A stretch of DNA of 64,000 bases from positions 1-64,000 of the IMG/VR virus record IMGVR_UViG_3300023174_000042; one strand, 5' to 3'. The position numbers and the translations under genes are program-made. This document shows positions 928 through 58,169 of this stretch, piece after piece. The notes beneath the pieces were generated by a model that saw nothing but the letters and a program-made list of their open reading frames with translations, was not told the origin of the DNA and did no database searches. The first letter of the stretch is position 1. Each line of letters starts with the position of its first letter.

Positions 928-1749
928 CTAAATCGAATCTGATATAATATCATCAACAACAATTTCTTCAAAGTCATAAGAATGTTTAATGTCTTGGACA
1001 TTATTTTTAATAAATTCTTCGATAAGATTTTGATTTCGTTCAGGTGAAGATTTAACACCATTTTGAATCGCATCTTGTATAGTGTAAGAAAATCTACCTC
1101 TTAATGGTGAAGTGTCTTTTACACTATCTTTCATACATTCATTTATTTTTGGATCTAGGTTATCAGTGTCATTAACACATTTGATTCCATTTTGGATAAT
1201 GTCTTTTACAAAAAATTCCATAGGCCTGATTGGATTTAAAACACGTTTTACACCATTTTGAATGGTGTCTTCAACGATTAATGATAAAAAACTTCTTGAA
1301 TGGATGGTGTGTCTTACCCCATTTTGAATGGTGTCTTCAATAATCCCAACATATGGGATTGGTTGACCCTCGGTGTGTCTTACCCCATTTTGAATGGTGT
1401 CTTCAACAACTACACCCCTGATAGCCCTTTTTCGAAAGGTGTGTCTTACCCCATTTTGAATGGTGTCTTCAACAGGTTCAATACCCAAAAATCTTGATTC
1501 AAACCAGTTCTTAATTAAATCTTTTTTTTCTGTGCAGTCCTTACCAATTAGTTCCAACTCACTTTGAAATAGGTTATAGTTGAACCACAAAGTTTTATCT
1601 TTTGTGAATTCAACCACCCATCTTTTGTCTTCGGTAAATATTAACCAAGTTGATCCTTGTTTTGTTGTATACTTGTCTGCACCTTCAATCATTTGGTCAA
1701 ACATTCTAAACACAAGTTTCTCTAATTTTTTTCCTGATGGATTTTTCAT
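928..1749 (-). CDS. protein with N-terminal globular domain and C-terminal VEDTIQNGVRHT repeats (22-aa period)
   Basis: 273-aa ORF; 12-aa constant plus 10-aa variable units; TATTTATT motif 33 nt upstream. Confidence 0.8.
   Translation of the reverse strand: MKNPSGKKLEKLVFRMFDQMIEGADKYTTKQGSTWLIFTEDKRWVVEFTKDKTLWFNYNLFQSELELIGKDCTEKKDLIKNWFESRFLGIEPVEDTIQNGVRHTFRKRAIRGVVVEDTIQNGVRHTEGQPIPYVGIIEDTIQNGVRHTIHSRSFLSLIVEDTIQNGVKRVLNPIRPMEFFVKDIIQNGIKCVNDTDNLDPKINECMKDSVKDTSPLRGRFSYTIQDAIQNGVKSSPERNQNLIEEFIKNNVQDIKHSYDFEEIVVDDIISDSI
1174..1473 (-). repeat. 36-bp repeat / 30-bp unique spacer array, 66-bp period, inside a CDS
   Basis: GTTGAAGACACCATTCAAAATGGGGTAAGACACACC at 1438-1473 and 1372-1407 (identical), 1306-1341 (35/36), 1240-1275 (29/36), 1174-1209 (degenerate); further degenerate copy 1045-1080. 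Confidence 0.95.
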
Positions 1750-13500: not shown

Positions 13501-13700
13501 AAAAACAAATATACGTAAGTTATTTGAATTAAAAAAAATAAATTGTAAAAAAAATAAAAAATTAGAAAAAATAAAATAAGAAGTATTATCACAGTAAGGT
13601 TTTTATTTTCATTCCACATATATGAAAAAAATTCATAAATATCGATCAATAAAAATCTTAAAACAAATGAAGTAAGAACTATTATAAATATTAAAATCAT
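13497..13700 (-). CDS. small membrane protein
   Basis: Very hydrophobic; overlaps both neighbours by 4 nt. Confidence 0.55.
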   Translation of the reverse strand: MILIFIIVLTSFVLRFLLIDIYEFFSYMWNENKNLTVIILLILFFLIFYFFYNLFFLIQITYVYLFL

Positions 13701-16700
13701 CTAATTATTAGTTTCAATGTCTCGGTTGAGTTTTCGGTCGAGAACACTGACACATAATAAACTCCTGATGGTAATTTAATATTTGACACATCAAATAGGT
13801 TAATACCTTTAATAATACTTACATTTAAAGAAAAAACTTCAGATCCTTTTGAATCTCTAACTATTAAAGTTCCATCACCAATCATTTGTTTATTATTTAA
13901 TACAACTTGAAAATCGCCTGAACTTGGATTTGGAAATATTGAAAAATAACCTTTTGAATTTCCATTACAAACAACATTTATCGGACCATGTTCTTTAAAT
14001 TGTCCGTCAATGTCGTATTGAATTAATTTATAATAATTATTTCCATCGATCGCATTTTCATCTTTTGTTGTATAATCTGTTATTTGATTTGAATTGCCAA
14101 CTGAATTTAAAGTGGTCAATTTAGACCAATTAATTCCATCTCTTGATTTTTGAATTTCAAAATAATCTGAGTTATGTTCAGTTGCTGTTTTCCAATTTAA
14201 AGTAATTAAATTATCACTACAAGTTCCATTGAAAGATAATAACTCAACTGGAAGTGCTTGTGAGTTTGGAGTTCCAATATTAAACCAACTAAACCCTTGT
14301 GTGTTATTACTTGATATCAAAAATGATTGTGGGTTTGCGTTTTGAGGAATTGTTACATGTGTTCCACAGGATTGCCAAGAAGTATGATTTGACCCTGGTG
14401 ATTTTATAATTCTACAAATCTGTGGTGTTGTCATACCAGTTATGTTATTTGCAAAAAACGTAATATTATATGGTGTTGAGTTTATGCTAGATGAATAATT
14501 TCCACCATTTGGAATTACTTCCCAATAACCATCAATAGAATAGTTTTGAATAAGTGAATTTGAAATTGTTAAAGGTAATCCGTTATATAAAGGACTTCCA
14601 TTAACAATAGGAGCTCCTGTATTATATCTAACGGTTAAAGATTGATTTACACCTGGCGATGAAGTAAAATTGATGTTTGAATATCTATTATAGGTTGATG
14701 TTCCAACAGGAAAAAATCCTTCAATACCGTTTGTAGGTAGGTTATTAAAAAACCTCTTAAATGGTCCTACAATTGTTCCTGTGTTATATGTTAAAGTTCC
14801 AGAATTTGAACTACTTGAACCTAATGTTAATAAATTAGTTGGTGTTGTAAAAATATTTCCTTGAATCATATTCAAGTTTCCTGTTACTACTACAGGATGG
14901 TTTAAGGTAAGGGTTGCTCCTCCCGTTTTATTTACTTTCATATTTAAAAGTTGTGAAGTTCCTGTTCCAATAAAAGATGAATTTTGACTTCCAACAAAAC
15001 TAACGGTTCCATTACTAGCGGTCAACGTTCCATTATTAACAATGTCATGATATATATGTAAACTATCATTTGTAAGATTTAAAGTTATTCCTGGATTTAC
15101 AAAAACATCATAAGCGTTTCCACTTGTAGTTAAAGTTGGGTTTGTATTTCCAATACAAATACCACCGTTTGCTTGATTTAATGTAAATACCTGACTTGAG
15201 TTTGTTGGTTGAGCATTTCCTGACATTCTAACAAAATGACCTGCTGGTTGTTTTTCATACCAATTTGTAGAAGTTGCCCAATCTGTAGATGTTAAACCTC
15301 CCCATAATAAATCAAATGAACCTATATTTGCTCCAAGTGAAGCCGCATTTGGCTGATTAAATGTAACTAATTTTTGATATGAAGTTGAGCATTGTCCATT
15401 AGTAACAGTCCATTGTAATGTATAAGATTGTCCGTAATTTCCTGTAAATGTTGATGTAGGTGAATTTACGTTTGAAAAAGAACCTCCAACTCCATTAAAA
15501 ACCATCCAAGTTCCAGTTTGACCTGCTTGTGGCGTGTTAGCTGCTAACTGAACCTGATTGATACCACAAGTAGAAACTCCAGTCTCCGGTTGACCTGCAT
15601 TTGCAACAGGTGCTGAAACTACTGTAACTGTTGTTGATGCGGTATTGGAACATCCATTTGAATTTGTTCCTGTTACAGTATAGGTTTGTGTTCCGTTTGG
15701 ATAAAAAGTAACTCCATTTGTTACTCCGTTATTCCAAGAGTAAGTGGTTGCTCCTGAACCGTTTAAAGATACTCCTGATCCTGAACAAATTGTTTGATTT
15801 GGTCCGGCACCAACTGATGGTAATGGGTTAACTGTAATTGTTCTACTTGAAGAGCTTGAACATCCATTTGAAGTGGCAATGACTGTATAAGTAGTTGTTG
15901 TAGTTGGAGTCGCAGTTGGGTTTGAAATTGAAGAATTATTAAGTGATGCTGATGGTGTCCATGAGTAAGTAATTGGTGGAGTTGTAGAACAAGTATTGAC
16001 CGATTGATTTACAACTTGACCTCCACCTAAACTTCCGCTCGAAATAGTCACTCCATTACAAGTAATTAGAAAAGTTGCTGTGTTGTCATTAAAAGTTCCT
16101 TGAGTTTCAATTGAAAATGTATAAGGTCCATTTGCTGTTGATCCAATTGTTATGGTATTTGTAGATCCTAAAGAATAATTTCCTCCTGAACCAATTAAAG
16201 ACCCTAAACTATTATATAATGTCCAACTTGTTTCATCCATAAATCCACCACTTGAAATTGTTACCACCAGATTCGCAGGAACAGATATACCTGAAACATT
16301 ACAATTAAGTTGAGTTGATGATCCAAGACAAATTGTATTTGATAAAGATGTGACACTGACAGTAGGCACTTGGTTTACTGTAATTGACGTAGATACACAA
16401 TTTGTACTAAATTGACTTCCATTATAGTTTCTTGCATAGTAGGTTGTGTTGGTAGTTGGTGAAACGGTAATTGAATTTCCTGTTCCGATTTGCGCCGTGC
16501 CACAACCTCCAGTATACCAATATACAGTTCCACTTGCTCCGTTTGCGGTTAATGTTGTAGATTGACCATTACATATTGTTGATTGTGTTGTAGAAATAGA
16601 AGTAGGATCTGGTGGTGGTGGGGTAGTACAAATAAGACCAATCTGAAAAGCGCTATTAGTGCTATATCCATGAACCAATATGTAATAAGTAAGACCTGGA

Positions 16701-17734
16701 ACTGATGTCCATTGATATGAAGCGGAAGTTGAAAGGCAACTTGGCCCGTTATCATCATTTCCTCCAACACACGTAAGTGATGAGCAGTTAGGTCCACTAA
16801 AAACGGAGATTTTGCTATCCCAAACTGTGTTACAAAGATAAGCCGTCATAATTTGACCTGTCCCTGTAATCTTAAACCAAACACCTGGCATTGTTTGTGT
16901 TACACTGCAAGTATTATTTTCTCCAGTTCCGCTATTAGTAGCATTTACAGTAGTGGCCGAAAGTAATTGACCACATGATATTGAATAAGCGTTACAAACC
17001 AAGTCGTTTGCCGGAGCAGAAGGAGCCGAACAAGTTATACAACTAACGGTAGATGTTCCACATGAAGACGCAGTTCCACAACTAGAATTTGTATTGTAAT
17101 GAACATAAACGGTTCCTGTATAGGATGAAGCCCAATTAAGAGGAGCAGTTCCATAAGCAACGATTGGTCCGTTATATGTTCCTGTATGAACAGTTATATA
17201 ACCACCCAGACTATATCCAAACTGATACGTTTGTCCGGCAACTACTCCTGATACGGTTGAATATTCACTTTGAAAGTTACAACTTGAAATTGTAACAGTT
17301 GTAGGTGTGTTTGGAGCAACCGCCGATCCGTATGAACTAGTATTTGTACATCCTGGTGTAGCAACACCACAACTTCCTATACAAGTTTGTCCTCCTGAAG
17401 TTGCCGTTCCAATTACAGGTTGAATGGTGTTTAACAGGACAGTTCCTACATTGTTTACTATCTGAACTCTCATTTCAGAAGGATATGACCCTGCAATTGT
17501 TCTAAAAACACGAATTGTTGAGCCTGAAGATGCTGAGAAATTATAGTTTAGTGGTCCATAACCTGAAGCAAGTGTTATGTTAGTTAGAACTGTAATACCA
17601 TTAACAGAAACAGAAACATAACCTCCATTCCAACCATCTCCCCAAGTATCGGTGAGTTTAATAGTATGGGTGCATGATTGTGAATAAAAAAAACTTGATA
17701 AAAACAAAAACAAATAAAGTAAAGCATTTCTCAT
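13697..17734 (-). CDS. large secreted Ig/PKD-like repeat protein with T9SS-type C-terminal sorting domain
   Basis: Signal peptide MRNALLYLFLFLSSFFYS/Q; T/S/N/G-rich beta domains; LPVELLSF; FSIFPNPSSG...LPSGVYYV...KLIIR. Confidence 0.85.
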   Translation of the reverse strand: MRNALLYLFLFLSSFFYSQSCTHTIKLTDTWGDGWNGGYVSVSVNGITVLTNITLASGYGPLNYNFSASSGSTIRVFRTIAGSYPSEMRVQIVNNVGTVLLNTIQPVIGTATSGGQTCIGSCGVATPGCTNTSSYGSAVAPNTPTTVTISSCNFQSEYSTVSGVVAGQTYQFGYSLGGYITVHTGTYNGPIVAYGTAPLNWASSYTGTVYVHYNTNSSCGTASSCGTSTVSCITCSAPSAPANDLVCNAYSISCGQLLSATTVNATNSGTGENNTCSVTQTMPGVWFKITGTGQIMTAYLCNTVWDSKISVFSGPNCSSLTCVGGNDDNGPSCLSTSASYQWTSVPGLTYYILVHGYSTNSAFQIGLICTTPPPPDPTSISTTQSTICNGQSTTLTANGASGTVYWYTGGCGTAQIGTGNSITVSPTTNTTYYARNYNGSQFSTNCVSTSITVNQVPTVSVTSLSNTICLGSSTQLNCNVSGISVPANLVVTISSGGFMDETSWTLYNSLGSLIGSGGNYSLGSTNTITIGSTANGPYTFSIETQGTFNDNTATFLITCNGVTISSGSLGGGQVVNQSVNTCSTTPPITYSWTPSASLNNSSISNPTATPTTTTTYTVIATSNGCSSSSSRTITVNPLPSVGAGPNQTICSGSGVSLNGSGATTYSWNNGVTNGVTFYPNGTQTYTVTGTNSNGCSNTASTTVTVVSAPVANAGQPETGVSTCGINQVQLAANTPQAGQTGTWMVFNGVGGSFSNVNSPTSTFTGNYGQSYTLQWTVTNGQCSTSYQKLVTFNQPNAASLGANIGSFDLLWGGLTSTDWATSTNWYEKQPAGHFVRMSGNAQPTNSSQVFTLNQANGGICIGNTNPTLTTSGNAYDVFVNPGITLNLTNDSLHIYHDIVNNGTLTASNGTVSFVGSQNSSFIGTGTSQLLNMKVNKTGGATLTLNHPVVVTGNLNMIQGNIFTTPTNLLTLGSSSSNSGTLTYNTGTIVGPFKRFFNNLPTNGIEGFFPVGTSTYNRYSNINFTSSPGVNQSLTVRYNTGAPIVNGSPLYNGLPLTISNSLIQNYSIDGYWEVIPNGGNYSSSINSTPYNITFFANNITGMTTPQICRIIKSPGSNHTSWQSCGTHVTIPQNANPQSFLISSNNTQGFSWFNIGTPNSQALPVELLSFNGTCSDNLITLNWKTATEHNSDYFEIQKSRDGINWSKLTTLNSVGNSNQITDYTTKDENAIDGNNYYKLIQYDIDGQFKEHGPINVVCNGNSKGYFSIFPNPSSGDFQVVLNNKQMIGDGTLIVRDSKGSEVFSLNVSIIKGINLFDVSNIKLPSGVYYVSVFSTENSTETLKLIIR

Positions 17735-47291: not shown

Positions 47292-48623
47292 TTATTTTTT
47301 ATAAGATAAAACCCTTCTATTTGAATCTTTATTTTTTTTTAAAAAATTTACTTCATCTATTATATTTCCTTCTTGGTCCAAGATTTCACCGCTTTCTCTA
47401 ACATAGTAATTAACAGGAACCTCAACAATTTTTTCAACTTCTTTAATAACCTCAACAGGAACCTCAACAATTTTTTCAACTTCTTTAATAACCTCAACAG
47501 GAATTTCGCGAACAACCTCAACCAATCTATCAACAGGAACCTCACGAACAACCTCAACCAATCTATCAACAGGAACCTCAACAATTTTTTCAACTTCTTT
47601 GATAACTTCAACAGGAACCTCAACAATTTTTTCAACTTCCACAATTCTGTCAATTTCAAATGGAATTTCTATTGGAACTTCAACAATTTTTTCAATTATT
47701 TCAGGCTCAACTTGGGGGGTATCTTGGGAGTCATCTAAGGTTAAAAAACTTTCAGGAACTTCAACTTCGTCTTCTTCAAAGACTTCTTTAATAACAGGTT
47801 TAATTTCTTCATCCTCTTCTTTTCTTCTATATTTTTTAAATGCCTGATTTGTTGATATAACAAGAGCAATTGCCAATGGATCAAAAACAAATATTAAAGT
47901 TAAAATAAAAAAGTTTGCGGTTTTTTTAACATCCCATCCGGTGATTTCACTAAGATATTTAATTGCCCCCAGTTCCCCTGATTCAATCTCTTTAGATGAT
48001 ATATCCAATATTTGAATATCCAAATTGGTAATGCTGTCATTTAGATTATCAATCTTTTTACTTAAAGTGTCTCTTGATTTTTGAGCGATGTTTAATTGTT
48101 GTTGAAATGCTCTTCTATTTCCATCATTTGCCTTTGTTAAAACTTGTCCTGACCTTCTATCAATAGTTTGAGTTGTTGTGCTTGTAGAAAGGGATGTTCT
48201 TAAACTTGTGATGTCTTTATCCAACCCATTTTTTTCTTTTTGGTATTCTTTTTTAATCTCCTCAAATCTTTGTTTCTTTACTTCAATATTTTTAATTTTT
48301 TTATTGTTGATTTCAAGACCAGCAATACTCTTTTGAAACCCTGTTGCCAAAAGTCCATAAATACCGATTGAAGTCAAAATTGATAACGTGACAAGAGCAA
48401 TGGTTAAATATAACTTTAATACACCATATATCTTGTTCCAAGCGTCATGAAGATAAGTGGCAATTGATATTTTAGAAATCTCCAAAAAAGATCCCATAAT
48501 GATTACAGGTATTGAAACTCCTGAAAAAATAATTGAAAGTCCGTATACACTATAATATGCTGCCGTTCCCGATAGTCCAAGTGCACAAAACAATAATAAC
48601 CAAGGTAAAAATTTACTATTCAT
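47292..48623 (-). CDS. multi-TM coiled-coil protein with VEVP/KEVEK repeats
   Basis: Three N-terminal TMs, coiled coil, fourth TM, alveolin-like repeats; TATTTATA at 48640-48647. Confidence 0.75.
   Translation of the reverse strand: MNSKFLPWLLLFCALGLSGTAAYYSVYGLSIIFSGVSIPVIIMGSFLEISKISIATYLHDAWNKIYGVLKLYLTIALVTLSILTSIGIYGLLATGFQKSIAGLEINNKKIKNIEVKKQRFEEIKKEYQKEKNGLDKDITSLRTSLSTSTTTQTIDRRSGQVLTKANDGNRRAFQQQLNIAQKSRDTLSKKIDNLNDSITNLDIQILDISSKEIESGELGAIKYLSEITGWDVKKTANFFILTLIFVFDPLAIALVISTNQAFKKYRRKEEDEEIKPVIKEVFEEDEVEVPESFLTLDDSQDTPQVEPEIIEKIVEVPIEIPFEIDRIVEVEKIVEVPVEVIKEVEKIVEVPVDRLVEVVREVPVDRLVEVVREIPVEVIKEVEKIVEVPVEVIKEVEKIVEVPVNYYVRESGEILDQEGNIIDEVNFLKKNKDSNRRVLSYKK
47410..47700 (-). repeat. 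coding tandem repeats: 42-bp (VEVIKEVEKIVEVP) x3 and 36-bp (VDRLVEVVRE[V/I]P) x2
   Basis: Near-identical DNA units visible directly. Confidence 0.9.
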
Positions 48624-50473: not shown

Positions 50474-51928
50474 TTAACATAATTTATATATATTTTCATA
50501 CTTAAATACTTTAGTACGATATACAGTATTAATAGAATGAATTGTACGTATATAAAAATCCTTATCGAAATTTGTATCAGTATTTAAATAGAAATCCTCC
50601 GAGTCAATCATATTTATGTTAGAAATAACAATATTTTTACAAATATTTTCACAATCATTCACCTTATTAATTCTCGATAATGAATGATCTGTAAATATAT
50701 CACAACCTTTTTCTTCTTGTTGTATAAAAATATATTTTCTATTAACATTTTGTAATTTATCGGATTCAACTAATCCGTGATATGTTGAGTTTGACCCCGC
50801 ACACCAATCAAGAATAATATCACCATCGTTAGTGAATGATGTAATAATGTCCCTCATTAATATAATTGATTTAGGAGTGTTAAACGTTTTTTCACCGTAT
50901 AGTTTCTTCAACACATCAGTTGCCTGTGTATTTCCATATTCAGTTTTATCCATAATGGTCTTCATAGGTTGGAATGTTTTTACTTTTTCCATGTAGTTGA
51001 TAACACCGTTATTTTCATGTAAAACATCATATGGTTTATTTTTATTTAAAATAGTCTCATATGTTGGTACCCATCTACCCCACTTTTCTCCATATTTTGG
51101 AAATATTACTTTATGAGTTTTAGAGTATTTCTCCTCAATATTTTTAACATATTCACTAATTTTATTATTCATATCATCAGTGTATATTTTTGTTTTACTG
51201 TAGTCTTTACAGACATTATTAACAAACTTTTTTAGTAAAAGATATTCATTCTTACTTATTGTTGAGATTTTATTAGTTCCTTTTTCAATTAAGAATGGGT
51301 AAAATTGTCCTTGTCTATCGCAAACTAACTTTGCATTATATGCCAACAGACTTCTAGGTTTTACGTCTTTACCCTTGTCTTTACTTTCATTCAAAACACC
51401 TTCACCATATTCAAGTAAATTAATATTTTTAGCACAAACCACTAAATATTCATTAGTCGTTACTAAATCTTTTTTATTCCTTCTTCCACCACCACCTCTA
51501 TTTGACACAACAGTTGCAGTTGTTAATACATTTTTTTCACCAAAAACATCAACACATAAATTTTCCAAATTTCTTTTCTCATTGTGATCAATAGAAATAA
51601 CCATAACCCCATTATCGGAAAGTAGTTCTCTAACAATAATTAATCTAGGTAACATCCAAGAAATCCAATCTGAATGATAATTTAATGAATCGGTAGTATT
51701 AAATGTATCATTATAAATGAAATCCTCATTTCCGGTGTTATAAGGTACATCAGCATATGCTAATTTTATTTTTCCCTTATAAATGGAACTTAACCCTATT
51801 AATGATTGTAAATTATCACCTTTAACACCTAAAACATCAAATTCATCACTAAAATTAATGTTTGGAATTTTAACACCGTCTAAAATTTCTTTGTACTCGT
51901 TTGGTACTGTATTTTTATAAACTACCAT
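50474..51928 (-). CDS. mod: type III Mod-like DNA methyltransferase with variant motifs
   Basis: GDNL..L, YADVPYNTG (DPPY variant), SWMLPRL, ISID, FNTPKS, ILDWCAGSNST (DFFAGSGTT variant). Confidence 0.75.
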   Translation of the reverse strand: MVVYKNTVPNEYKEILDGVKIPNINFSDEFDVLGVKGDNLQSLIGLSSIYKGKIKLAYADVPYNTGNEDFIYNDTFNTTDSLNYHSDWISWMLPRLIIVRELLSDNGVMVISIDHNEKRNLENLCVDVFGEKNVLTTATVVSNRGGGGRRNKKDLVTTNEYLVVCAKNINLLEYGEGVLNESKDKGKDVKPRSLLAYNAKLVCDRQGQFYPFLIEKGTNKISTISKNEYLLLKKFVNNVCKDYSKTKIYTDDMNNKISEYVKNIEEKYSKTHKVIFPKYGEKWGRWVPTYETILNKNKPYDVLHENNGVINYMEKVKTFQPMKTIMDKTEYGNTQATDVLKKLYGEKTFNTPKSIILMRDIITSFTNDGDIILDWCAGSNSTYHGLVESDKLQNVNRKYIFIQQEEKGCDIFTDHSLSRINKVNDCENICKNIVISNINMIDSEDFYLNTDTNFDKDFYIRTIHSINTVYRTKVFKYENIYKLC

Positions 51929-54011: not shown

Positions 54012-54051
54012 ACAAATATACGAATAAAGTTGAGATTTGTTTCAAGTTTTT
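54012..54051 (-). repeat. 40-bp direct repeat copy 2 (contains TATATTTG)
   Basis: 35/40 identical to 50301-50340. Confidence 0.85.
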
Positions 54052-56422
54052 ACAAAACTTTTGACAAATTATTTTCTTTTTTAATTTTCACCACATGGTC
54101 ACCCCATGAGGACACAGCACTATTATGCGATATAACAAACACTTTTTCAAAATAATCTTTAATCTTCACAAAGAATTCATAAACCATATCTAAGTTCTCA
54201 GGAGATATTTTACCAAAGACTTCGTCTAATACGACGAGATTCGGAGTTGGTAAAGTACATATCTTTGTTAATACCGCTCTTAATGCTAATGATGATAAAG
54301 TCTTCTCATATCCACTTCCTGATGTCATTAGTTTTTCAACACCTGTTCCATTATCAATCATCATAAACTCAACTTCATTTTTGTCGTTAATTCTTATTTC
54401 CATTTTGAAATAACATGAATCTTCCATAAGTCTTTGAAGTTCCGTATTGATTAAAGGCATCATAGTTTTCATAATCATTTTTGAAATCCCATTTTTACCA
54501 TAAAGTTCCAAATAGATCTTAAAGATTTTTTCTTTCTCTTCTTCTTCTTTGATTTTAACAATCATTTTTTTGTTATTATCAATCTTTTCATCAAGTGATT
54601 TAATTGATGTTTCATTTGTTAAAATTGAGTTTGTAATAGTTCTATTTTGAATTTCTAAATCTTCTAATCTAAGGTCAGCCTTTATCAACTGTGCGTCTAT
54701 TTTATGATTTTCAGAAATTTTATCTTGTATTTCTTCCCAACGTTTAATCTTATCGTTTAATGAACCAATCTTTAAATCACAACTTTCAACAGATATTTCA
54801 TATTTTTCTTTAACCAGTTTGTTTTTTTCGTATTCATCAAATTCTTTTTTGAGTCTCACAAATGATTGTTCTTTTTTGAAAAAATCATTCATAAGTGTTG
54901 TTTTTGTGTTTTTTTTCACAATAAGTCCATTTAACTCTGCAATTTTTGAATTTGTGATTGCTGCGTTCATTAACTCAATTCCACAATGTTCGCATTTGAT
55001 TCCACCCTCAACTGAAGATTTTAATTTGTTGATTGATTCTATTTCAGTGTCAATTTGAATAATTTCTTTATAAACATTGTTATATTGTTCTTTAATTTCA
55101 TCATGTTTATCCTCATGGTAAAACTCAGATGGTTCAACGACTTTGATTTCAGAAATTTTTGTTAAATAACCTGACTTTTCTTTTTCAATTTCTTTTATTT
55201 CATCTTTGGTTTTATCAGGATTTAATAAACTTAATTCTTGATCAATGTTTGTATGTTTTCTTTTTAACATATCATCACGATATGTTTTTCCTTTCGAAAT
55301 TGCTTGATTTACGTCTGATAAATTTTTCTTTTCTTCTTCAATTTTATTTTTTAATTCTATAATTGAAGTTTGGTATGTTTCAATATCAGTTTTTAATTGT
55401 TCTGAAGAATATAGATTTGATATCTTTTGTTTTGAAAACTCTAAATAGATTTCTTTTGCGACTTCTTCTTTTCTTTTCAAAAACTCAAGTCCCATAAATC
55501 TTGATAACACCTGACCTCTTGCTGTTGGTTTTGATTCCAATAAATCTTCAAGGTTTGATCCTGTTGTAAGGATCGTCATTAAAAAGTCTTCCTTTGTTCC
55601 AATTGAGTTTTTAATGAAGGCTTCTGTTTCTCTTCTTTGTTCTCCCGTAAAATTTAATAAAGAACCATCTGACAACTTTTTAAAAAAGTCCAGTTCGGTT
55701 TTGACATTCCATTCACCTTTTTTGGACATCTTTCTTTCGATGTTTCTAACAATAACATAATCTTCACCATCAATTGTAATTTCACCTTTAACATGAACGT
55801 TATCTTTGTTTGAAAATCGGTTAAATATTTCTTCTGCTTTTGTTGTTTTTGTTGTTTCGTTAAAAAACAAAAACATTAAAAGATCCACCGTTAATACAGT
55901 TTTTCCACCAAAATTGGGAGGATCAGATTCAACCACCACAATACCATTTAAACTATCAAAGTTTAATCTTTGGTTTTCACCGTAGGATAAAAAGTTTGAA
56001 AATTCAATATTTCTGATATACCATTTTTTAAATTGTGATGAAGTTTCTTCATCTCCACTCATCTTATTTTCGACCATTTTGTTGATGTTTAATACATCAT
56101 CAGTTTTGTCTTCATGTCCTTTTGATTTAAGGTAATTTGAAATAAGATCAAGTTGGTATTGTGTGTCAGAGATATTCACCGACACATCAATACTTTGTAT
56201 AGTTTCACTTTCAACATTTTTTGCCTTTGTTAAAACATTAACGTTTGTTGTGTTATACTTTTTAGAAAAATAATGCTTGACACTTTTGATTTTATCTTGT
56301 GTAAAGTTTTCTGGTACGTCTTCCCAAACAACTTGTATAGTGGGATTTTCAAATTTTGAAAAGTCCAAATCTTTTATCATAATATCGTAATTGAATAATT
56401 TCGGTGGATTGAATAAATCCAT
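54050..56422 (-). CDS. sbcC: SbcC/Rad50/T4 gp46-like ATPase
   Basis: FSNFLSYG, NFGGKT, Zn hook CEHCG, signature SGSGYE, LDEVF, VISH. Confidence 0.9.
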   Translation of the reverse strand: MDLFNPPKLFNYDIMIKDLDFSKFENPTIQVVWEDVPENFTQDKIKSVKHYFSKKYNTTNVNVLTKAKNVESETIQSIDVSVNISDTQYQLDLISNYLKSKGHEDKTDDVLNINKMVENKMSGDEETSSQFKKWYIRNIEFSNFLSYGENQRLNFDSLNGIVVVESDPPNFGGKTVLTVDLLMFLFFNETTKTTKAEEIFNRFSNKDNVHVKGEITIDGEDYVIVRNIERKMSKKGEWNVKTELDFFKKLSDGSLLNFTGEQRRETEAFIKNSIGTKEDFLMTILTTGSNLEDLLESKPTARGQVLSRFMGLEFLKRKEEVAKEIYLEFSKQKISNLYSSEQLKTDIETYQTSIIELKNKIEEEKKNLSDVNQAISKGKTYRDDMLKRKHTNIDQELSLLNPDKTKDEIKEIEKEKSGYLTKISEIKVVEPSEFYHEDKHDEIKEQYNNVYKEIIQIDTEIESINKLKSSVEGGIKCEHCGIELMNAAITNSKIAELNGLIVKKNTKTTLMNDFFKKEQSFVRLKKEFDEYEKNKLVKEKYEISVESCDLKIGSLNDKIKRWEEIQDKISENHKIDAQLIKADLRLEDLEIQNRTITNSILTNETSIKSLDEKIDNNKKMIVKIKEEEEKEKIFKIYLELYGKNGISKMIMKTMMPLINTELQRLMEDSCYFKMEIRINDKNEVEFMMIDNGTGVEKLMTSGSGYEKTLSSLALRAVLTKICTLPTPNLVVLDEVFGKISPENLDMVYEFFVKIKDYFEKVFVISHNSAVSSWGDHVVKIKKENNLSKVL

Positions 56423-56919: not shown

Positions 56920-57273
56920 TTAATTATTACTAGGTCTATTTTCTTCAAACCATTCTATTACACCATTCAACGCCCAAACGGCACCTGCGGATGTAATACC
57001 GTCAAAAAACCACGAATAGTATAAAGGTGTGTTAAACATATGATTTGTTGGTGAATAAATCAACAAGGATAATACAAAACCTCCCCAAGTGGAAAAACAC
57101 AACGGGCAATTAATTAAACCTGATAAAAACTTACCCAAAAAATTGAAGGGTAATGTTTTATTTTCTCCCCATCGACTTAGAAAGTCTCTCAATCCTTGAA
57201 AAATTGATCCGTAGACCATAATGTTCATTAGTCCGTAACTCATTACAAACCATACTAATACTTGTGTTGTCAT
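56920..57273 (-). CDS. DUF1360-like membrane protein
   Basis: TM segments around LINCPLCFSTW. Confidence 0.6.
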   Translation of the reverse strand: MTTQVLVWFVMSYGLMNIMVYGSIFQGLRDFLSRWGENKTLPFNFLGKFLSGLINCPLCFSTWGGFVLSLLIYSPTNHMFNTPLYYSWFFDGITSAGAVWALNGVIEWFEENRPSNN

Positions 57274-58169
57274 AATCTATTATTTAAATTTGATCCCCTT
57301 AAAAAGTAACCCTGATTTTGGTTACCATTCAAAAGTTCTCGGTTTATTTTTTCTAATTCTTTTATTTGTTCGTTCTTTTGTTGTAGTTCATTTCTTAGAT
57401 TTTGTAAAGTCTCTTGTAACATTTTTAACTTATTATTTGTTACAGGATCGTCTAACTTTTGTCTAAGTTCATCTAACTCATTATTCTTTTTTAACATTTC
57501 ATTTTGGAAAAAAATTTCCATTTCTTCTGTTTTAGTGAAAGATTCTTGTCTGATATTGTCAATTTCTGCGGTCTTAATCGAAATTTCTCCGTTTAAGTGT
57601 TCTATTTTTGACAACAATTCATTCAACTGTTCGGAATTTCTTAACAGTTCAATTTCCAACTTGGAGTTTTTTTCGCCAAGTTCGTTTATTTGACTGTCAT
57701 CGGTGGTATAGATTATTTTCTCAACCAATCTATCAACCGGAACTTCTTTAATAACTTCCTTAACAACTACCCTGTCAACAGGTATTTCTTTTGTAACCTC
57801 AACAATCTTTTCTATCTCCTTTACAACATTAAAAGGAACCTCAACTATCTTTTCTACCTCTTTTATTATTTCTACAGGAACCTCAATGATCTTTTCAACT
57901 TCTTTAATTACCTCAACCTCTTTGATGACTTCAACAGGAACTTCCACACGTTTTTCACGGATTACCTCTTTTATTAAGTCTTTTTCACCTTCATTATCCG
58001 TTTTTCCCAAAAACCCATATTTTTTAATATCGAATCCTTGTTTGAAACATAGATATATGAAATTATCGATATCCTTAATTTCTTGTGATTCACAAAATGC
58101 AGACACTGCCTGCATCATTTCTTTACTAAATATTTTGGAGTTTTTCGAATCCATTTTCAATATCTTCAA
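57270..58169 (-). CDS. soluble protein with VEVP/KEVEK repeats and C-terminal coiled coil
   Basis: Same repeat vocabulary as 47292..48623. Confidence 0.8.
   Translation of the reverse strand: MKILKMDSKNSKIFSKEMMQAVSAFCESQEIKDIDNFIYLCFKQGFDIKKYGFLGKTDNEGEKDLIKEVIREKRVEVPVEVIKEVEVIKEVEKIIEVPVEIIKEVEKIVEVPFNVVKEIEKIVEVTKEIPVDRVVVKEVIKEVPVDRLVEKIIYTTDDSQINELGEKNSKLEIELLRNSEQLNELLSKIEHLNGEISIKTAEIDNIRQESFTKTEEMEIFFQNEMLKKNNELDELRQKLDDPVTNNKLKMLQETLQNLRNELQQKNEQIKELEKINRELLNGNQNQGYFLRGSNLNNRL

What the first reader, a model, noticed from the sequence alone, without database searches (positions are those of the whole stretch)
1045..1473. CRISPR-like 36/30 repeat-spacer array translated in frame inside a protein
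Seen: repeat GTTGAAGACACCATTCAAAATGGGGTAAGACACACC recurs at an exact 66-bp period with unrelated 30-nt spacers (TTTCGAAAAAGGGCTATCAGGGGTGTAGTT; GAGGGTCAACCAATCCCATATGTTGGGATT; ATCCATTCAAGAAGTTTTTTATCATTAATC; TTAAATCCAATCAGGCCTATGGAATTTTTT). Copies nearest the 5' end are identical even at synonymous sites, then decay in one direction (36/36, 36/36, 35/36, 29/36, degenerate). The repeat holds a hairpin (ACACCATT-CAA-AATGG[G/T]GT, perfect in copy 4). The two 5'-most spacers are 13/30 and 14/30 GC, well above the window. Known: 36-nt repeats with 30-nt spacers are the geometry of type II and VI-B arrays, and VI-B repeats typically begin GTTG. Inference: either a CRISPR array captured and domesticated as coding sequence, or a repeat protein that grows polarly by adding new 10-aa inserts between fixed 12-aa units. 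Against a live CRISPR role: no cas gene here, and old copies keep the amino-acid pattern through synonymous change.
Basis: partly seen in the sequence, partly recalled or inferred. Interest (0 to 1): 0.8.

Follow-up and report, generated by a model that had tools for sequence, protein, structure and literature searches.

The report
Translated CRISPR-like array in phage gene
A gene of a giant freshwater phage contains a true CRISPR-style repeat-spacer array, with one spacer copied exactly from a co-occurring Flavobacteriia chromosome, yet the array is kept open and translated as part of a conserved protein, a combination I found described nowhere.

Summary
On the minus strand, a 36-nt repeat alternates with unrelated 30-nt spacers (period 66) inside ORF 928-1749 (273 aa). 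The ORF has a conserved 92-aa N-terminal domain, then 12-aa repeat units with 10-aa variable inserts, then degenerate units.

It is neither an ordinary repeat protein nor a mis-called non-coding CRISPR.
- **Coding.** Across 33 related phage loci and more than 2,000 homologous proteins, the frame is under strong selection. 104 of 105 inter-repeat segments are stop-free (2,014 codons, against 132 and 225 stops in the other frames). Repeat variation sits at third codon positions.
- **CRISPR-type growth.** Spacers are mutually unrelated, look like random DNA, average 40% GC in a 29% GC phage, and their peptides drift neutrally. Sister arrays show 30-nt insertions flanked by two identical copies of the local repeat.
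- **Foreign origin.** Window spacer 1 matches a Flavobacteriia MAG chromosome 30/30, exactly bounded. That bacterium co-occurs with the phage in three lake metagenomes.

No cas gene was found in the window or flanks. Best reading: host Cas1-Cas2-type integration acts in trans on a translated phage gene. The benefit to the phage is not resolved. High interest.

The parts
928..1749 (-). ORF of 273 aa: N-terminal domain, in-frame repeat-spacer array, degenerate C-terminal units
   Evidence: Homologues: 2,180 proteins at E<=0.01 and 33 IMG/VR loci.
1474..1749 (-). Conserved 92-aa N-terminal domain (helix, four strands, two helices). It sits where a CRISPR leader would.
   Evidence: AF2 pLDDT 91. 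No PDB fold match; only uncharacterised proteins of uncultured phages match. Codon-position entropy 0.19/0.07/0.35 shows it is coding.
1438..1473 (-). Repeat 1, canonical 36 nt (VEDTIQNGVRHT)
   Evidence: 36/36
1408..1437 (-). Spacer 1 (FRKRAIRGVV), copied from a Flavobacteriia chromosome (GT9 glycosyltransferase gene). In ORF sense it is antisense to that gene.
   Evidence: 30/30 match with mismatches at -1 and +1. GT9 Pfam hit. Contigs in runs X1-X3 match only 1408-1437 and run on into the bacterial sequence.
1372..1407 (-). Repeat 2, identical to repeat 1
1342..1371 (-). Spacer 2 (EGQPIPYVGI), source not found
   Evidence: The 22-mer was found only in the phage itself, in IMG/VR and in JGI metagenomes.
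1306..1341 (-). Repeat 3 (35/36, V to I)
1276..1305 (-). Spacer 3 (IHSRSFLSLI)
1240..1275 (-). Repeat 4 (29/36)
1210..1239 (-). Spacer 4 (LNPIRPMEFF), an old spacer also present as LTPIRPMEFF in relative P0050
1174..1209 (-). Repeat 5, degenerate (21/36, VKDIIQNGIKCV)
1111..1146 (-). Repeat 6, degenerate (20/36, INECMKDSVKDT), 63 nt after repeat 5
1045..1080 (-). Repeat 7, degenerate (22/36, IQDAIQNGVKSS)
988..1023 (-). Repeat 8, degenerate (20/36, IEEFIKNNVQDI)
931..957 (-). Last, partial unit (VDDIISDSI), followed by the stop codon

Best explanation
The locus is a genuine, translated phage gene. It encodes an orphan N-terminal domain, a run of 12-aa units that AF2 models at low confidence as beta-hairpins, and conserved C-terminal modules. 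Its 36-nt repeat-coding units also serve as integration sites for a CRISPR-type spacer integrase. New units arise when exactly 30 nt of foreign DNA is inserted next to a repeat and that repeat is duplicated. The inserted DNA seems to come largely from the bacterial host's chromosome. Because 36+30 = 66 = 22 codons, each event adds 22 residues in frame. Only insertions without a stop or frameshift persist, because the protein needs its downstream parts. The inserted peptides are neutral loops, and whatever information the spacers carry is at the nucleic-acid level. I infer that the integrase is the Flavobacteriia host's Cas1-Cas2 acting in trans, as it does on cas1/2-less type VI-B arrays with the same 36/30 geometry. 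My preferred reading of the benefit is that the gene acts as a decoy or hijack of host CRISPR adaptation, and possibly of crRNA loading. A benefit-free, self-propagating off-target is nearly as likely.

Shown: coding selection, insertion with repeat duplication, one host-derived spacer, neutral spacer peptides, and canonical rare-codon young repeats. Inferred: the identity of the integrase, the sources of the other spacers, and the benefit to the phage.
For: - **Coding.** With the frame defined by the repeat itself, 105 of 109 inter-repeat distances are multiples of 3. Of those, 104 of 105 segments are stop-free over 2,014 codons, against 132 and 225 stops in the other frames.
- **Repeat constraint.** Repeat entropy by codon position is 0.59/0.27/0.91, with four-fold sites near saturation. 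Old repeats keep the amino-acid motif but relax to genome codon usage.
- **Conserved protein modules.** C-terminal modules and a 27-aa cassette are conserved even in homologues whose N-terminal domain is only 40% identical.
- **Insertion signature.** In L015, one 30-nt spacer flanked by two copies of repeat variant R04 stands where L016 has a single R04. In L016, one spacer flanked by two R14 stands where L020 has a single R14. Seven single-lineage spacers lie between identical repeats.
- **Unrelated spacers.** Peptide Hamming distances are 1-3 or at least 5, and nucleotide distances centre on 22/30. Amino-acid composition tracks random DNA (r=0.85).
- **Neutral spacer peptides.** Homologous spacer pairs differ by 3 synonymous and 8 nonsynonymous changes, against a neutral expectation of 21% synonymous.
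- **Foreign source.** Spacer 1 matches MAG Flavobacteriia contig RFQF01000063.1 30/30 and is exactly bounded. The same junctions appear in independent assemblies of three lake runs that hold the phage. Spacer GC fits 75% host-like and 25% phage-like.
- **Canonical young repeats.** They use rare codons: GAC 91% against 22% in the genome, ACC 96% against 13%, GGG 87% against 6%. The exact 33-nt core occurs in 10 IMG/VR contigs.
- **Precedent.** In F. columnare the II-C and VI-B arrays share 36-bp repeats, VI-B acquires spacers in trans, and many are self-derived (PMC8092290).
Against: - Only one protospacer was found. Six spacers searched in IMG/VR, one of them also in JGI metagenomes, gave only their own arrays.
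- No cas1/cas2 or any other integrase was seen in the window or in the 12-kb flanks of nine related loci. The host's CRISPR repeats could not be examined, so repeat mimicry is untested.
- Repeats within most arrays differ by 4-7 nt, unlike active CRISPR arrays.
- Insertions are not leader-polar.
- No F. columnare-type PAM flanks the one protospacer.
- No evidence of RNA processing was obtainable, because the runs are held as contigs only.
- The AF2 model of the repeat region has low confidence.
- The benefit to the phage is conjecture.
Confidence: 0.7

Rival explanations
1. It is a working phage-borne CRISPR array. The transcript, sense or antisense, is processed into 66-nt crRNAs that load the host's Cas13b or Cas9. 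This would target host genes, or saturate the effector as an RNA anti-CRISPR. Translation would be secondary, for example protecting a long transcript in an operon. This overlaps with the best explanation rather than excluding it.
For: The 36/30 geometry equals type VI-B and F. columnare II-C arrays. On the plus strand the repeat reads GGUG...CAUUUUG...CAAC, close to the VI-B definition. In ORF sense, spacer 1 is antisense to a host mRNA. The canonical nucleotide sequence of young repeats is kept across divergent phages. Most hairpin pairs are kept. Phage crRNA-like arrays and mini-arrays are known (PMC6858448, PMC11656645, bioRxiv 10.1101/2024.10.29.618823).
Against: Repeat variation follows codon positions, not RNA pairing, and there are no compensatory changes. 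Old repeats lose the nucleotide sequence but keep the peptide. Repeats within an array are heterogeneous. There is no Rfam CRISPR-DR hit, no cas gene and no anti-repeat in the window. A need for translation alone does not explain amino-acid conservation.
Confidence: 0.2
2. The insertions are made by a mechanism other than CRISPR Cas1-Cas2. This could be an unrecognised phage-encoded integrase or recombinase, or a retroelement-like diversifier, acting on the repeat to diversify a binding protein.
For: No cas genes lie near the array in any locus. The N-terminal domain is an orphan fold always fused to the array. Insertions occur at interior repeats.
Against: A 30-nt insert with exact duplication of a 36-nt target is the specific product of Cas1-Cas2 with a ruler, and the geometry matches Flavobacteriia arrays. 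No RT or integrase appears among the Pfam families listed, the best 25 of 36 and of 32. Spacer peptides evolve neutrally, so there is no sign of selection for binding diversity. A 92-aa domain is an unlikely integrase.
Confidence: 0.1
3. It is an ordinary tandem-repeat protein. Its linkers diverged by point mutation and were shuffled by recombination, and the 30-nt host match is coincidence or unrelated gene transfer.
For: The repeat motif is under protein-level selection. Arrays are mosaics that share cassettes, and one spacer is duplicated in L020, so recombination does occur.
Against: There are no intermediates between identical and unrelated spacers. Identical repeats flank unrelated spacers. 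A 30/30 match bounded exactly by the repeats has a chance expectation of about 1e-6 in 596 Gb (own calculation). Spacer composition is flat across codon positions and 11 GC points above the genome.
Confidence: 0.05
4. It is a non-coding CRISPR array that gene callers translated by mistake (spurious spaced-repeat protein, PMC7673337).
For: A 66-nt period keeps any open repeat frame in register, and such artefacts are documented in databases.
Against: There are 0-1 stops in 2,014 in-frame codons, where about 140-240 are expected. Variation is at third positions. The amino-acid motif survives in repeats with 12-16 nucleotide changes. N- and C-terminal protein modules are conserved.
Confidence: 0.02

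Closest known systems
Type VI-B (Cas13b) and F. columnare type II-C CRISPR arrays of Flavobacteriia, with in-trans adaptation (Hoikkala 2021, PMC8092290; Smargon 2016, bioRxiv 10.1101/092577)
   Same: 36-nt repeats and 30-nt spacers. The array itself lacks cas1/cas2 and would depend on an integrase supplied in trans. Spacers can come from the host chromosome. New spacers arrive with repeat duplication. One repeat end and a central U-run partly resemble the VI-B repeat.
   Different: The array is in a phage, inside an ORF and under protein-coding selection. Repeats are heterogeneous within arrays and insertions are not leader-polar. The GUUG/CAAC ends are not both present. No cas13b or cas9 is in view.
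Virus-borne mini-CRISPR arrays, single repeat units (Racr) and viral crRNA-like arrays (PMC6858448; PMC11656645; bioRxiv 10.1101/2024.10.29.618823)
   Same: Orphan CRISPR-type repeats carried by a virus, presumably relying on the host's Cas machinery.
   Different: Those are non-coding, usually hold 1-2 spacers, have repeats identical to the host's, and their spacers mostly target related viruses. Here there are 4-14 units, they are translated, no viral targets were found, and one host-chromosome source was.
Neo-CRISPR arrays from off-target Cas1-Cas2 integration (Nivala et al. 2018, as described in bioRxiv 10.1101/148544)
   Same: A spacer plus a duplicated target is inserted at a repeat-like site outside a canonical CRISPR locus. 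This creates more targets and a growing array.
   Different: That was seen in E. coli chromosomes with over-expressed Cas1-Cas2. Here it is a natural, ancient, widespread phage gene family whose reading frame is preserved.
Spurious proteins translated from CRISPR arrays (Rubio 2020, PMC7673337)
   Same: Database proteins with spaced identical peptide repeats and unrelated 10-aa inserts.
   Different: Here the frame is demonstrably selected and the repeats evolve as codons.

Membership tests
CRISPR array (generic) | Direct repeats of fixed length separated by unique spacers of fixed similar length | tested here: met
   36-nt repeats and 30-nt spacers. 66 of 109 distinct inter-repeat distances are exactly 66 nt.
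CRISPR array (generic) | Spacers are copies of foreign DNA (protospacers) | tested here: met
   Met for one spacer: 30/30, exactly bounded, in a Flavobacteriia chromosome. Six others were searched in IMG/VR without a source. The composition of the rest is host-like.
CRISPR array (generic) | A new unit is a spacer insertion with duplication of the adjacent repeat | tested here: met
   Sister arrays L015/L016 and L016/L020 differ by one 30-nt spacer flanked by two identical copies of the local repeat variant.
CRISPR array (generic) | Leader-proximal, polarised acquisition | tested here: not met
   The window array and P0050 fit polarity: the trailer is shared and the proximal spacers differ. In L015, L016 and L020, however, the insertions are interior.
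CRISPR array (generic) | Repeats nearly identical within an array | tested here: not met
   Only the first three window repeats are. Most arrays have 4-12 differences between units.
CRISPR array (generic) | Non-coding; transcribed and processed into crRNAs | tested here: not met
   It is under coding selection. Processing was not testable because the runs are held as contigs.
CRISPR array (generic) | cas genes adjacent | tested here: not met
   None among the families listed for the 94 other window ORFs or for 58 flanking ORFs of related loci. Only the best 25 families are listed per scan. The remaining 208 kb of the phage contig was not seen.
Type VI-B (Cas13b) array | 36-nt direct repeat with about 30-nt spacers | tested here: met
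Type VI-B (Cas13b) array | Complementary 5'-GUUG and CAAC-3' repeat ends | tested here: not met
   The sense strand reads GUUG...CACC and the antisense reads GGUG...CAAC. One end fits on each strand.
Type VI-B (Cas13b) array | [quoted passage not shown] | tested here: inconclusive
   UUUU is central only on the window plus strand, which is antisense to the ORF. The transcribed strand is unknown.
Type VI-B (Cas13b) array | cas13b with csx27 or csx28 next to the array | tested here: not met
   No such protein is among the families listed for the window; PADLOC listed only 25 of 94 families, so a single cas hit could be hidden. The host genome could not be searched.
Virus-borne mini-array / Racr | Repeat identical or near-identical to the host's CRISPR repeat | not testable with these tools
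Rfam CRISPR-DR families give no hit.
Virus-borne mini-array / Racr | Spacers target related viruses | tested here: not met
   Six spacers match only their own arrays in IMG/VR. No hits in 400 kb of related phage DNA or in INPHARED.
Neo-CRISPR (off-target Cas1-Cas2 integration) | Spacer plus duplicated pseudo-repeat at a site outside a cas-linked array | tested here: met
Neo-CRISPR (off-target Cas1-Cas2 integration) | Dependence on Cas1-Cas2 | not testable with these tools
   Needs genetics or biochemistry.
Ordinary tandem-repeat protein | Variable segments are homologous and diverged by point mutation | tested here: not met
   Bimodal distances.
Ordinary tandem-repeat protein | Repeat unit under purifying selection at the protein level | tested here: met
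Diversity-generating retroelement target | Template repeat plus reverse transcriptase nearby; adenine-specific variation | tested here: not met
   No RVT family among the families listed for the window or flanks. Spacers are wholly unrelated, not adenine-mutated copies.

The most novel reading that the evidence does not exclude
The phage family has evolved a dual-use element. It is a protein-coding gene built to be written into by the host's CRISPR integrase. The translated scaffold guarantees that the array is maintained and expressed. Its repeats divert spacer acquisition away from the host's own arrays, or its transcript feeds host-derived guides to the host's Cas effector. This would be a new class of anti-CRISPR or host-takeover device. 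It would also be the first natural case of CRISPR adaptation directly writing new peptide segments into a protein. As a by-product, these arrays would record each phage's past hosts.
Probability: 0.3. Interest if true: 0.95.

Novelty: new variant of a known kind. Interest (0 to 1): 0.85.

Why it matters
- **CRISPR adaptation writing into a phage protein.** CRISPR-type adaptation would be seen acting on a virus genome inside a translated gene. Each captured 30-nt spacer would become a 10-residue insert. That links nucleic-acid memory to protein sequence, which I found in no paper or review searched here.
- **Scale.** The family is large: more than 2,000 proteins in lake and other metagenomes. 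This would be a common feature of freshwater Bacteroidota phages, not a curiosity.
- **Host records.** The arrays may store fragments of host chromosomes. If so, they give a direct, phage-side way to assign hosts to uncultured giant phages.
- **Testable questions.** They offer a natural system to study in-trans and ectopic spacer integration, possible adaptation decoys, and how much random peptide insertion a repeat scaffold tolerates.
- **Annotation.** Pipelines that discard "translated CRISPRs" as artefacts would have thrown this family away.

Tried and rejected
**Annotation of the protein**
- Pfam, PHROGs and NCBIfam gave no hit. The only trace was a 14.7-bit dodecin-like motif match, far below the cutoff.
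- ESM Atlas and Foldseek on the whole-protein model gave nothing usable; the model has pLDDT 52.
- The N-terminal profile against PDB sequences gave nothing.
- No cultured phage in INPHARED has the protein or similar DNA.

**RNA and regulatory signals**
- Rfam, at gathering and at E-value thresholds, gave no CRISPR-DR hit for the repeat.
- The hairpin has no compensatory changes, so RNA structure is neither supported nor excluded.
- No tracrRNA-like anti-repeat was found in the window; the best match is 14 nt.
- The promoter and terminator scan was at chance level and does not cover Bacteroidota promoters.

**Protospacer searches without result**
- 74 spacers against 400 kb of related phage DNA.
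- Six spacers against IMG/VR, one of them also against JGI metagenomes.
- Whole arrays against INPHARED and PLSDB.

**Ideas rejected**
- RiPP-like multi-core precursor or displayed binding loops: rejected because spacer peptides evolve neutrally and look like translated random DNA.
- Replication-origin iterons inside a gene: rejected because they do not explain exact 30-nt foreign inserts with repeat duplication.
- DGR: rejected because no RT appears among the listed families and the variation is not adenine-specific.
- A link between phage-encoded GT9-family genes in the flanks and the host GT9 source of spacer 1. The one phage ORF I compared shows no similarity to the host gene, and I did not establish which flank ORFs carry the GT9 hit. 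Left open as probable coincidence.
Full report
**1.

Reading the window shows the repeat on the minus strand.
- Exact or near-exact copies lie at 1438-1473 (36/36), 1372-1407 (36/36) and 1306-1341 (35/36). None is expected in shuffled sequence.
- The repeat finder adds 1240-1277 (76%) and weaker copies down to 988.
- A coordinate check gives nine units in all. The period is 66 nt for the first five, and identities to the canonical unit run 36, 36, 35, 29, 21, 20, 22 and 20 of 36, followed by a partial last unit.
- The array lies in ORF 928..1749(-), 273 aa. This is a 92-aa N-terminal part followed by 12-aa units of the type VEDTIQNGVRHT, separated by unrelated 10-aa inserts.
- The window is 29% GC, and spacers 1 and 2 are 43% and 47%.
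- TRF does not report the array, as expected when half of each period is unrelated.

**2. Context**

The window is the start of a 272,576-bp IMG/VR contig.
- Its genes are those of a giant phage: sigma factor, DnaJ, glutamine synthetase, Hc1-like protein, RNA ligase, primase, SbcC-like nuclease and several DNA methylases.
- A 1,345-aa protein carries a type IX secretion sorting domain, which points to a Bacteroidota host.
- No tRNA or Rfam family is present.
- No cas, reverse transcriptase or integrase family appears among the families listed for the 94 other window ORFs or for 58 ORFs flanking related loci. Each scan lists only its best 25 families.
- In the related loci the neighbourhood is conserved: a PcfJ-like gene lies upstream and thymidylate synthase downstream.

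**3. A large family with one architecture**

- The protein has 2,180 database relatives at E<=0.01, of 165-477 aa, none with a meaningful name or Pfam domain.
- A search with the N-terminal domain alone found 270 cluster representatives. Those only 40% identical still carry arrays of the same 12-aa motif.
- 33 IMG/VR loci encode the domain followed by an array.
- Many phages have two such genes in tandem.
- No cultured phage in INPHARED has it.
- With a 70-sequence alignment, the N-terminal domain folds confidently (pLDDT 91) as a helix, four strands and two helices. It has no match among solved structures. Its only matches are uncharacterised proteins of uncultured phages.
- The whole-protein model is poor (pLDDT 52). 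It draws each 12-aa unit as a beta-hairpin around the NG turn, with the inserts as loops.

**4. The array is translated and under selection**

This excludes the null hypothesis that a gene caller translated a non-coding CRISPR array by mistake (PMC7673337).
- The loci were collected through the N-terminal domain, so the state of the array did not influence which loci were picked.
- I defined the frame by the repeat itself. 105 of 109 distinct repeat-to-repeat distances are multiples of three.
- 104 of the 105 in-frame segments have no stop in 2,014 codons. The other two frames hold 132 and 225 stops (an earlier count gave 0 of 740 against 40 and 46 of 666).
- Among 161 repeat copies, entropy by codon position is 0.59, 0.27 and 0.91. 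The four-fold sites of Gly, Val and Thr are nearly saturated.
- Old units keep the amino-acid pattern after 12-16 nucleotide changes.
- The N-terminal domain also evolves as a coding sequence.
- C-terminal modules and a 27-aa internal cassette are conserved across the family. This explains why frame and openness must be kept.

**5. Yet the array grows the way CRISPR arrays do**

- *Spacers are unrelated.* Among 190 distinct 10-aa inserts from 120 proteins, pairs differ at 1-3 positions or at 5 or more, with nothing in between. At the nucleotide level the distances centre on 22 of 30, the random expectation.
- *Spacers look like random DNA.* Base composition is flat across codon positions. Amino-acid composition tracks the translation of random DNA (r=0.85).
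- *Spacer peptides drift.* Homologous spacers in different phages differ by 3 synonymous and 8 nonsynonymous changes, against 21% synonymous expected under neutrality.
- *Sister arrays show the insertion events.* Where L016 has one copy of repeat variant R04, L015 has a 30-nt spacer flanked by two R04. Where L020 has one R14, L016 has a spacer flanked by two R14. Seven spacers confined to one lineage lie between identical repeats. A 30-nt insertion with duplication of a 36-nt target is the product expected of a Cas1-Cas2 integrase with a ruler (established knowledge; see also PMC8092290).
- *Insertions are not confined to the proximal end.* These events are interior. In the window, by contrast, the identical repeats are proximal. 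Its relative P0050 shares the distal part but has three different proximal spacers.
- *Recombination also acts.* Arrays are mosaics, and one spacer is duplicated in L020.

**6. One spacer has an exact source**

- The central 22-mer of window spacer 1 hit one record among 185,579 species genomes: contig RFQF01000063.1 of MAG Flavobacteriia bacterium WB4_2_1453.
- The match extends to exactly 30 of 30 and stops at both spacer borders, with mismatches at -1 and +1.
- By my calculation, the chance expectation for a bounded 30-mer in 596 Gb is about 1e-6.
- The site lies in a GT9 glycosyltransferase gene on a 44% GC contig with ordinary bacterial genes.
- In ORF sense the spacer is antisense to that gene and out of its frame. 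The phage peptide is therefore unrelated to the host protein.
- Three lake metagenome runs from two studies hold the phage. In each, other contigs match only window 1408-1437 and continue on both sides into this bacterial gene. The source organism therefore co-occurs with the phage, and the junction is not an assembly artefact.
- Spacer 2 was searched in IMG/VR and in JGI metagenomes. Spacer 1 and four spacers from other arrays were searched in IMG/VR. All matched only their own arrays.
- Nothing was found in related phage DNA, INPHARED or PLSDB.
- The GC content of 88 spacers (mean 12.1 of 30) fits a mixture of about 75% host-like and 25% phage-like sequence.

**7. Two layers of constraint on the repeat**

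- The canonical unit uses codons that are rare in this genome: GAC 22%, ACC 13%, GGG 6%.
- Repeats close to the canonical unit keep them (91%, 96% and 87%). Diverged units relax toward genome usage (50%, 23% and 26%) while keeping the residues.
- The exact 33-nt core recurs in ten IMG/VR contigs whose N-terminal domains are 83-100% identical.
- A locus with only 61% N-terminal identity keeps the first 27 nt.
- So young units carry a conserved nucleotide sequence. This is as expected if they are the units an integrase recognises and copies, or if the RNA matters. Old units are held only by the protein.
- The hairpin is mostly kept but shows no compensatory changes.

**8. Comparison with known systems**

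- The 36/30 geometry is that of type VI-B arrays. In F. columnare it is also that of II-C arrays.
- In F. columnare the cas1/2-less VI-B array acquires spacers in trans, many from the host's own chromosome (PMC8092290).
- The VI-B repeat is defined by 36 nt, a poly-U loop and GUUG/CAAC ends (bioRxiv 10.1101/092577). The phage unit has GUUG...CACC on the sense strand and GGUG...UUUU...CAAC on the antisense strand. This is a partial fit only.
- No F. columnare-type PAM flanks the protospacer.
- Known viral CRISPR elements are mini-arrays, single repeat units and crRNA-like arrays. They are non-coding and mostly aimed at related viruses (PMC6858448, PMC11656645, bioRxiv 10.1101/2024.10.29.618823).
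- Off-target "neo-CRISPR" formation is known from E. coli (Nivala 2018, as cited in bioRxiv 10.1101/148544).
- One survey of hypervariable repeat proteins deliberately removed translated CRISPRs (PMC10392669).
- I found no description of a CRISPR-type array maintained as coding sequence.

**9. Verdict**

Most likely (about 0.7), this is a translated phage gene whose repeat units are written into by a CRISPR-type integrase, probably the host's, supplied in trans. Only frame-preserving, stop-free events are retained.

Whether the phage benefits is open. It could gain a decoy for adaptation, a supply of guides or competitor RNAs for host Cas proteins, or nothing beyond tolerating a self-propagating off-target. 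I lean slightly to the decoy or hijack reading, because the canonical nucleotide sequence persists across divergent phages.

The main weaknesses:
- Only a single protospacer was found.
- The host's CRISPR loci were not seen.
- The rest of the phage genome was not seen.
- No RNA or protein evidence could be obtained.

Noticed in passing
window 47412-47636 (in ORF 47292-48623, minus strand) and 57795-57935 (in ORF 57270-58169, minus strand): Two further in-frame tandem repeats with a 42-nt (14-aa) period and related consensus units, in two different phage ORFs without family hits.
   Followed up: no
window 13697-17734 (minus strand): A 1,345-aa phage protein with an Ig-like CHU_C-associated domain and a C-terminal type IX secretion sorting domain. 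This is a host-type export signal on a phage protein and a pointer to a Bacteroidota host.
   Followed up: partly
L015 1758-1838, L017 2098-2178, L012, L013, L019, L023 and others: A conserved 81-nt (27-aa) cassette, TPSGYLGSIEMKGKIVHQIESPKQNNE, stands in place of a spacer at different positions in many arrays. It is recognisable even in distant homologues such as P0195 and absent from the window's array. It looks like a functional module, not a captured spacer.
   Followed up: partly
L015-L018, L020, L021, L024, L033, L034, L036-L038: Two array genes in tandem. The upstream paralogue has an N-terminal domain about 60-66% identical, its own array, and ends ...TIQNGEKIK just before the next start codon.
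   Followed up: partly
L020 6484-6579: The same spacer (DYFEYTNNTL) occurs twice in succession between different repeat variants. This is a duplication by recombination rather than a new acquisition.
   Followed up: no
protein P0077 (C-terminus): The ORF reads the repeat in a shifted frame (...KTPFKMG) after an insert. This is either a frameshifted, dying array or a sequencing error.
   Followed up: no
flanks of related loci (58 ORFs of L012, L016, L023, L024, L031, L033, L037, L046, L049): Two flank ORFs hit Pfam GT9 (heptosyltransferase), and others hit sugar epimerases and GT2. This is the same enzyme family as the host gene that supplied window spacer 1. I did not determine which ORFs these are. 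The one ORF I compared is unrelated to the host gene.
   Followed up: partly
window 1454-1683, run X20: Contigs of a lake metatranscriptome library match the N-terminal coding region at about 90-95% identity. A related gene is present in an RNA library, but DNA carry-over cannot be excluded.
   Followed up: no
window 50474-51928, plus a second ORF whose coordinates the batch scan did not report: Two N6/N4 DNA methylases and a D12-class adenine methylase, alongside an SbcC-like nuclease (54050-56422). This is typical anti-restriction and recombination equipment of large phages.
   Followed up: no
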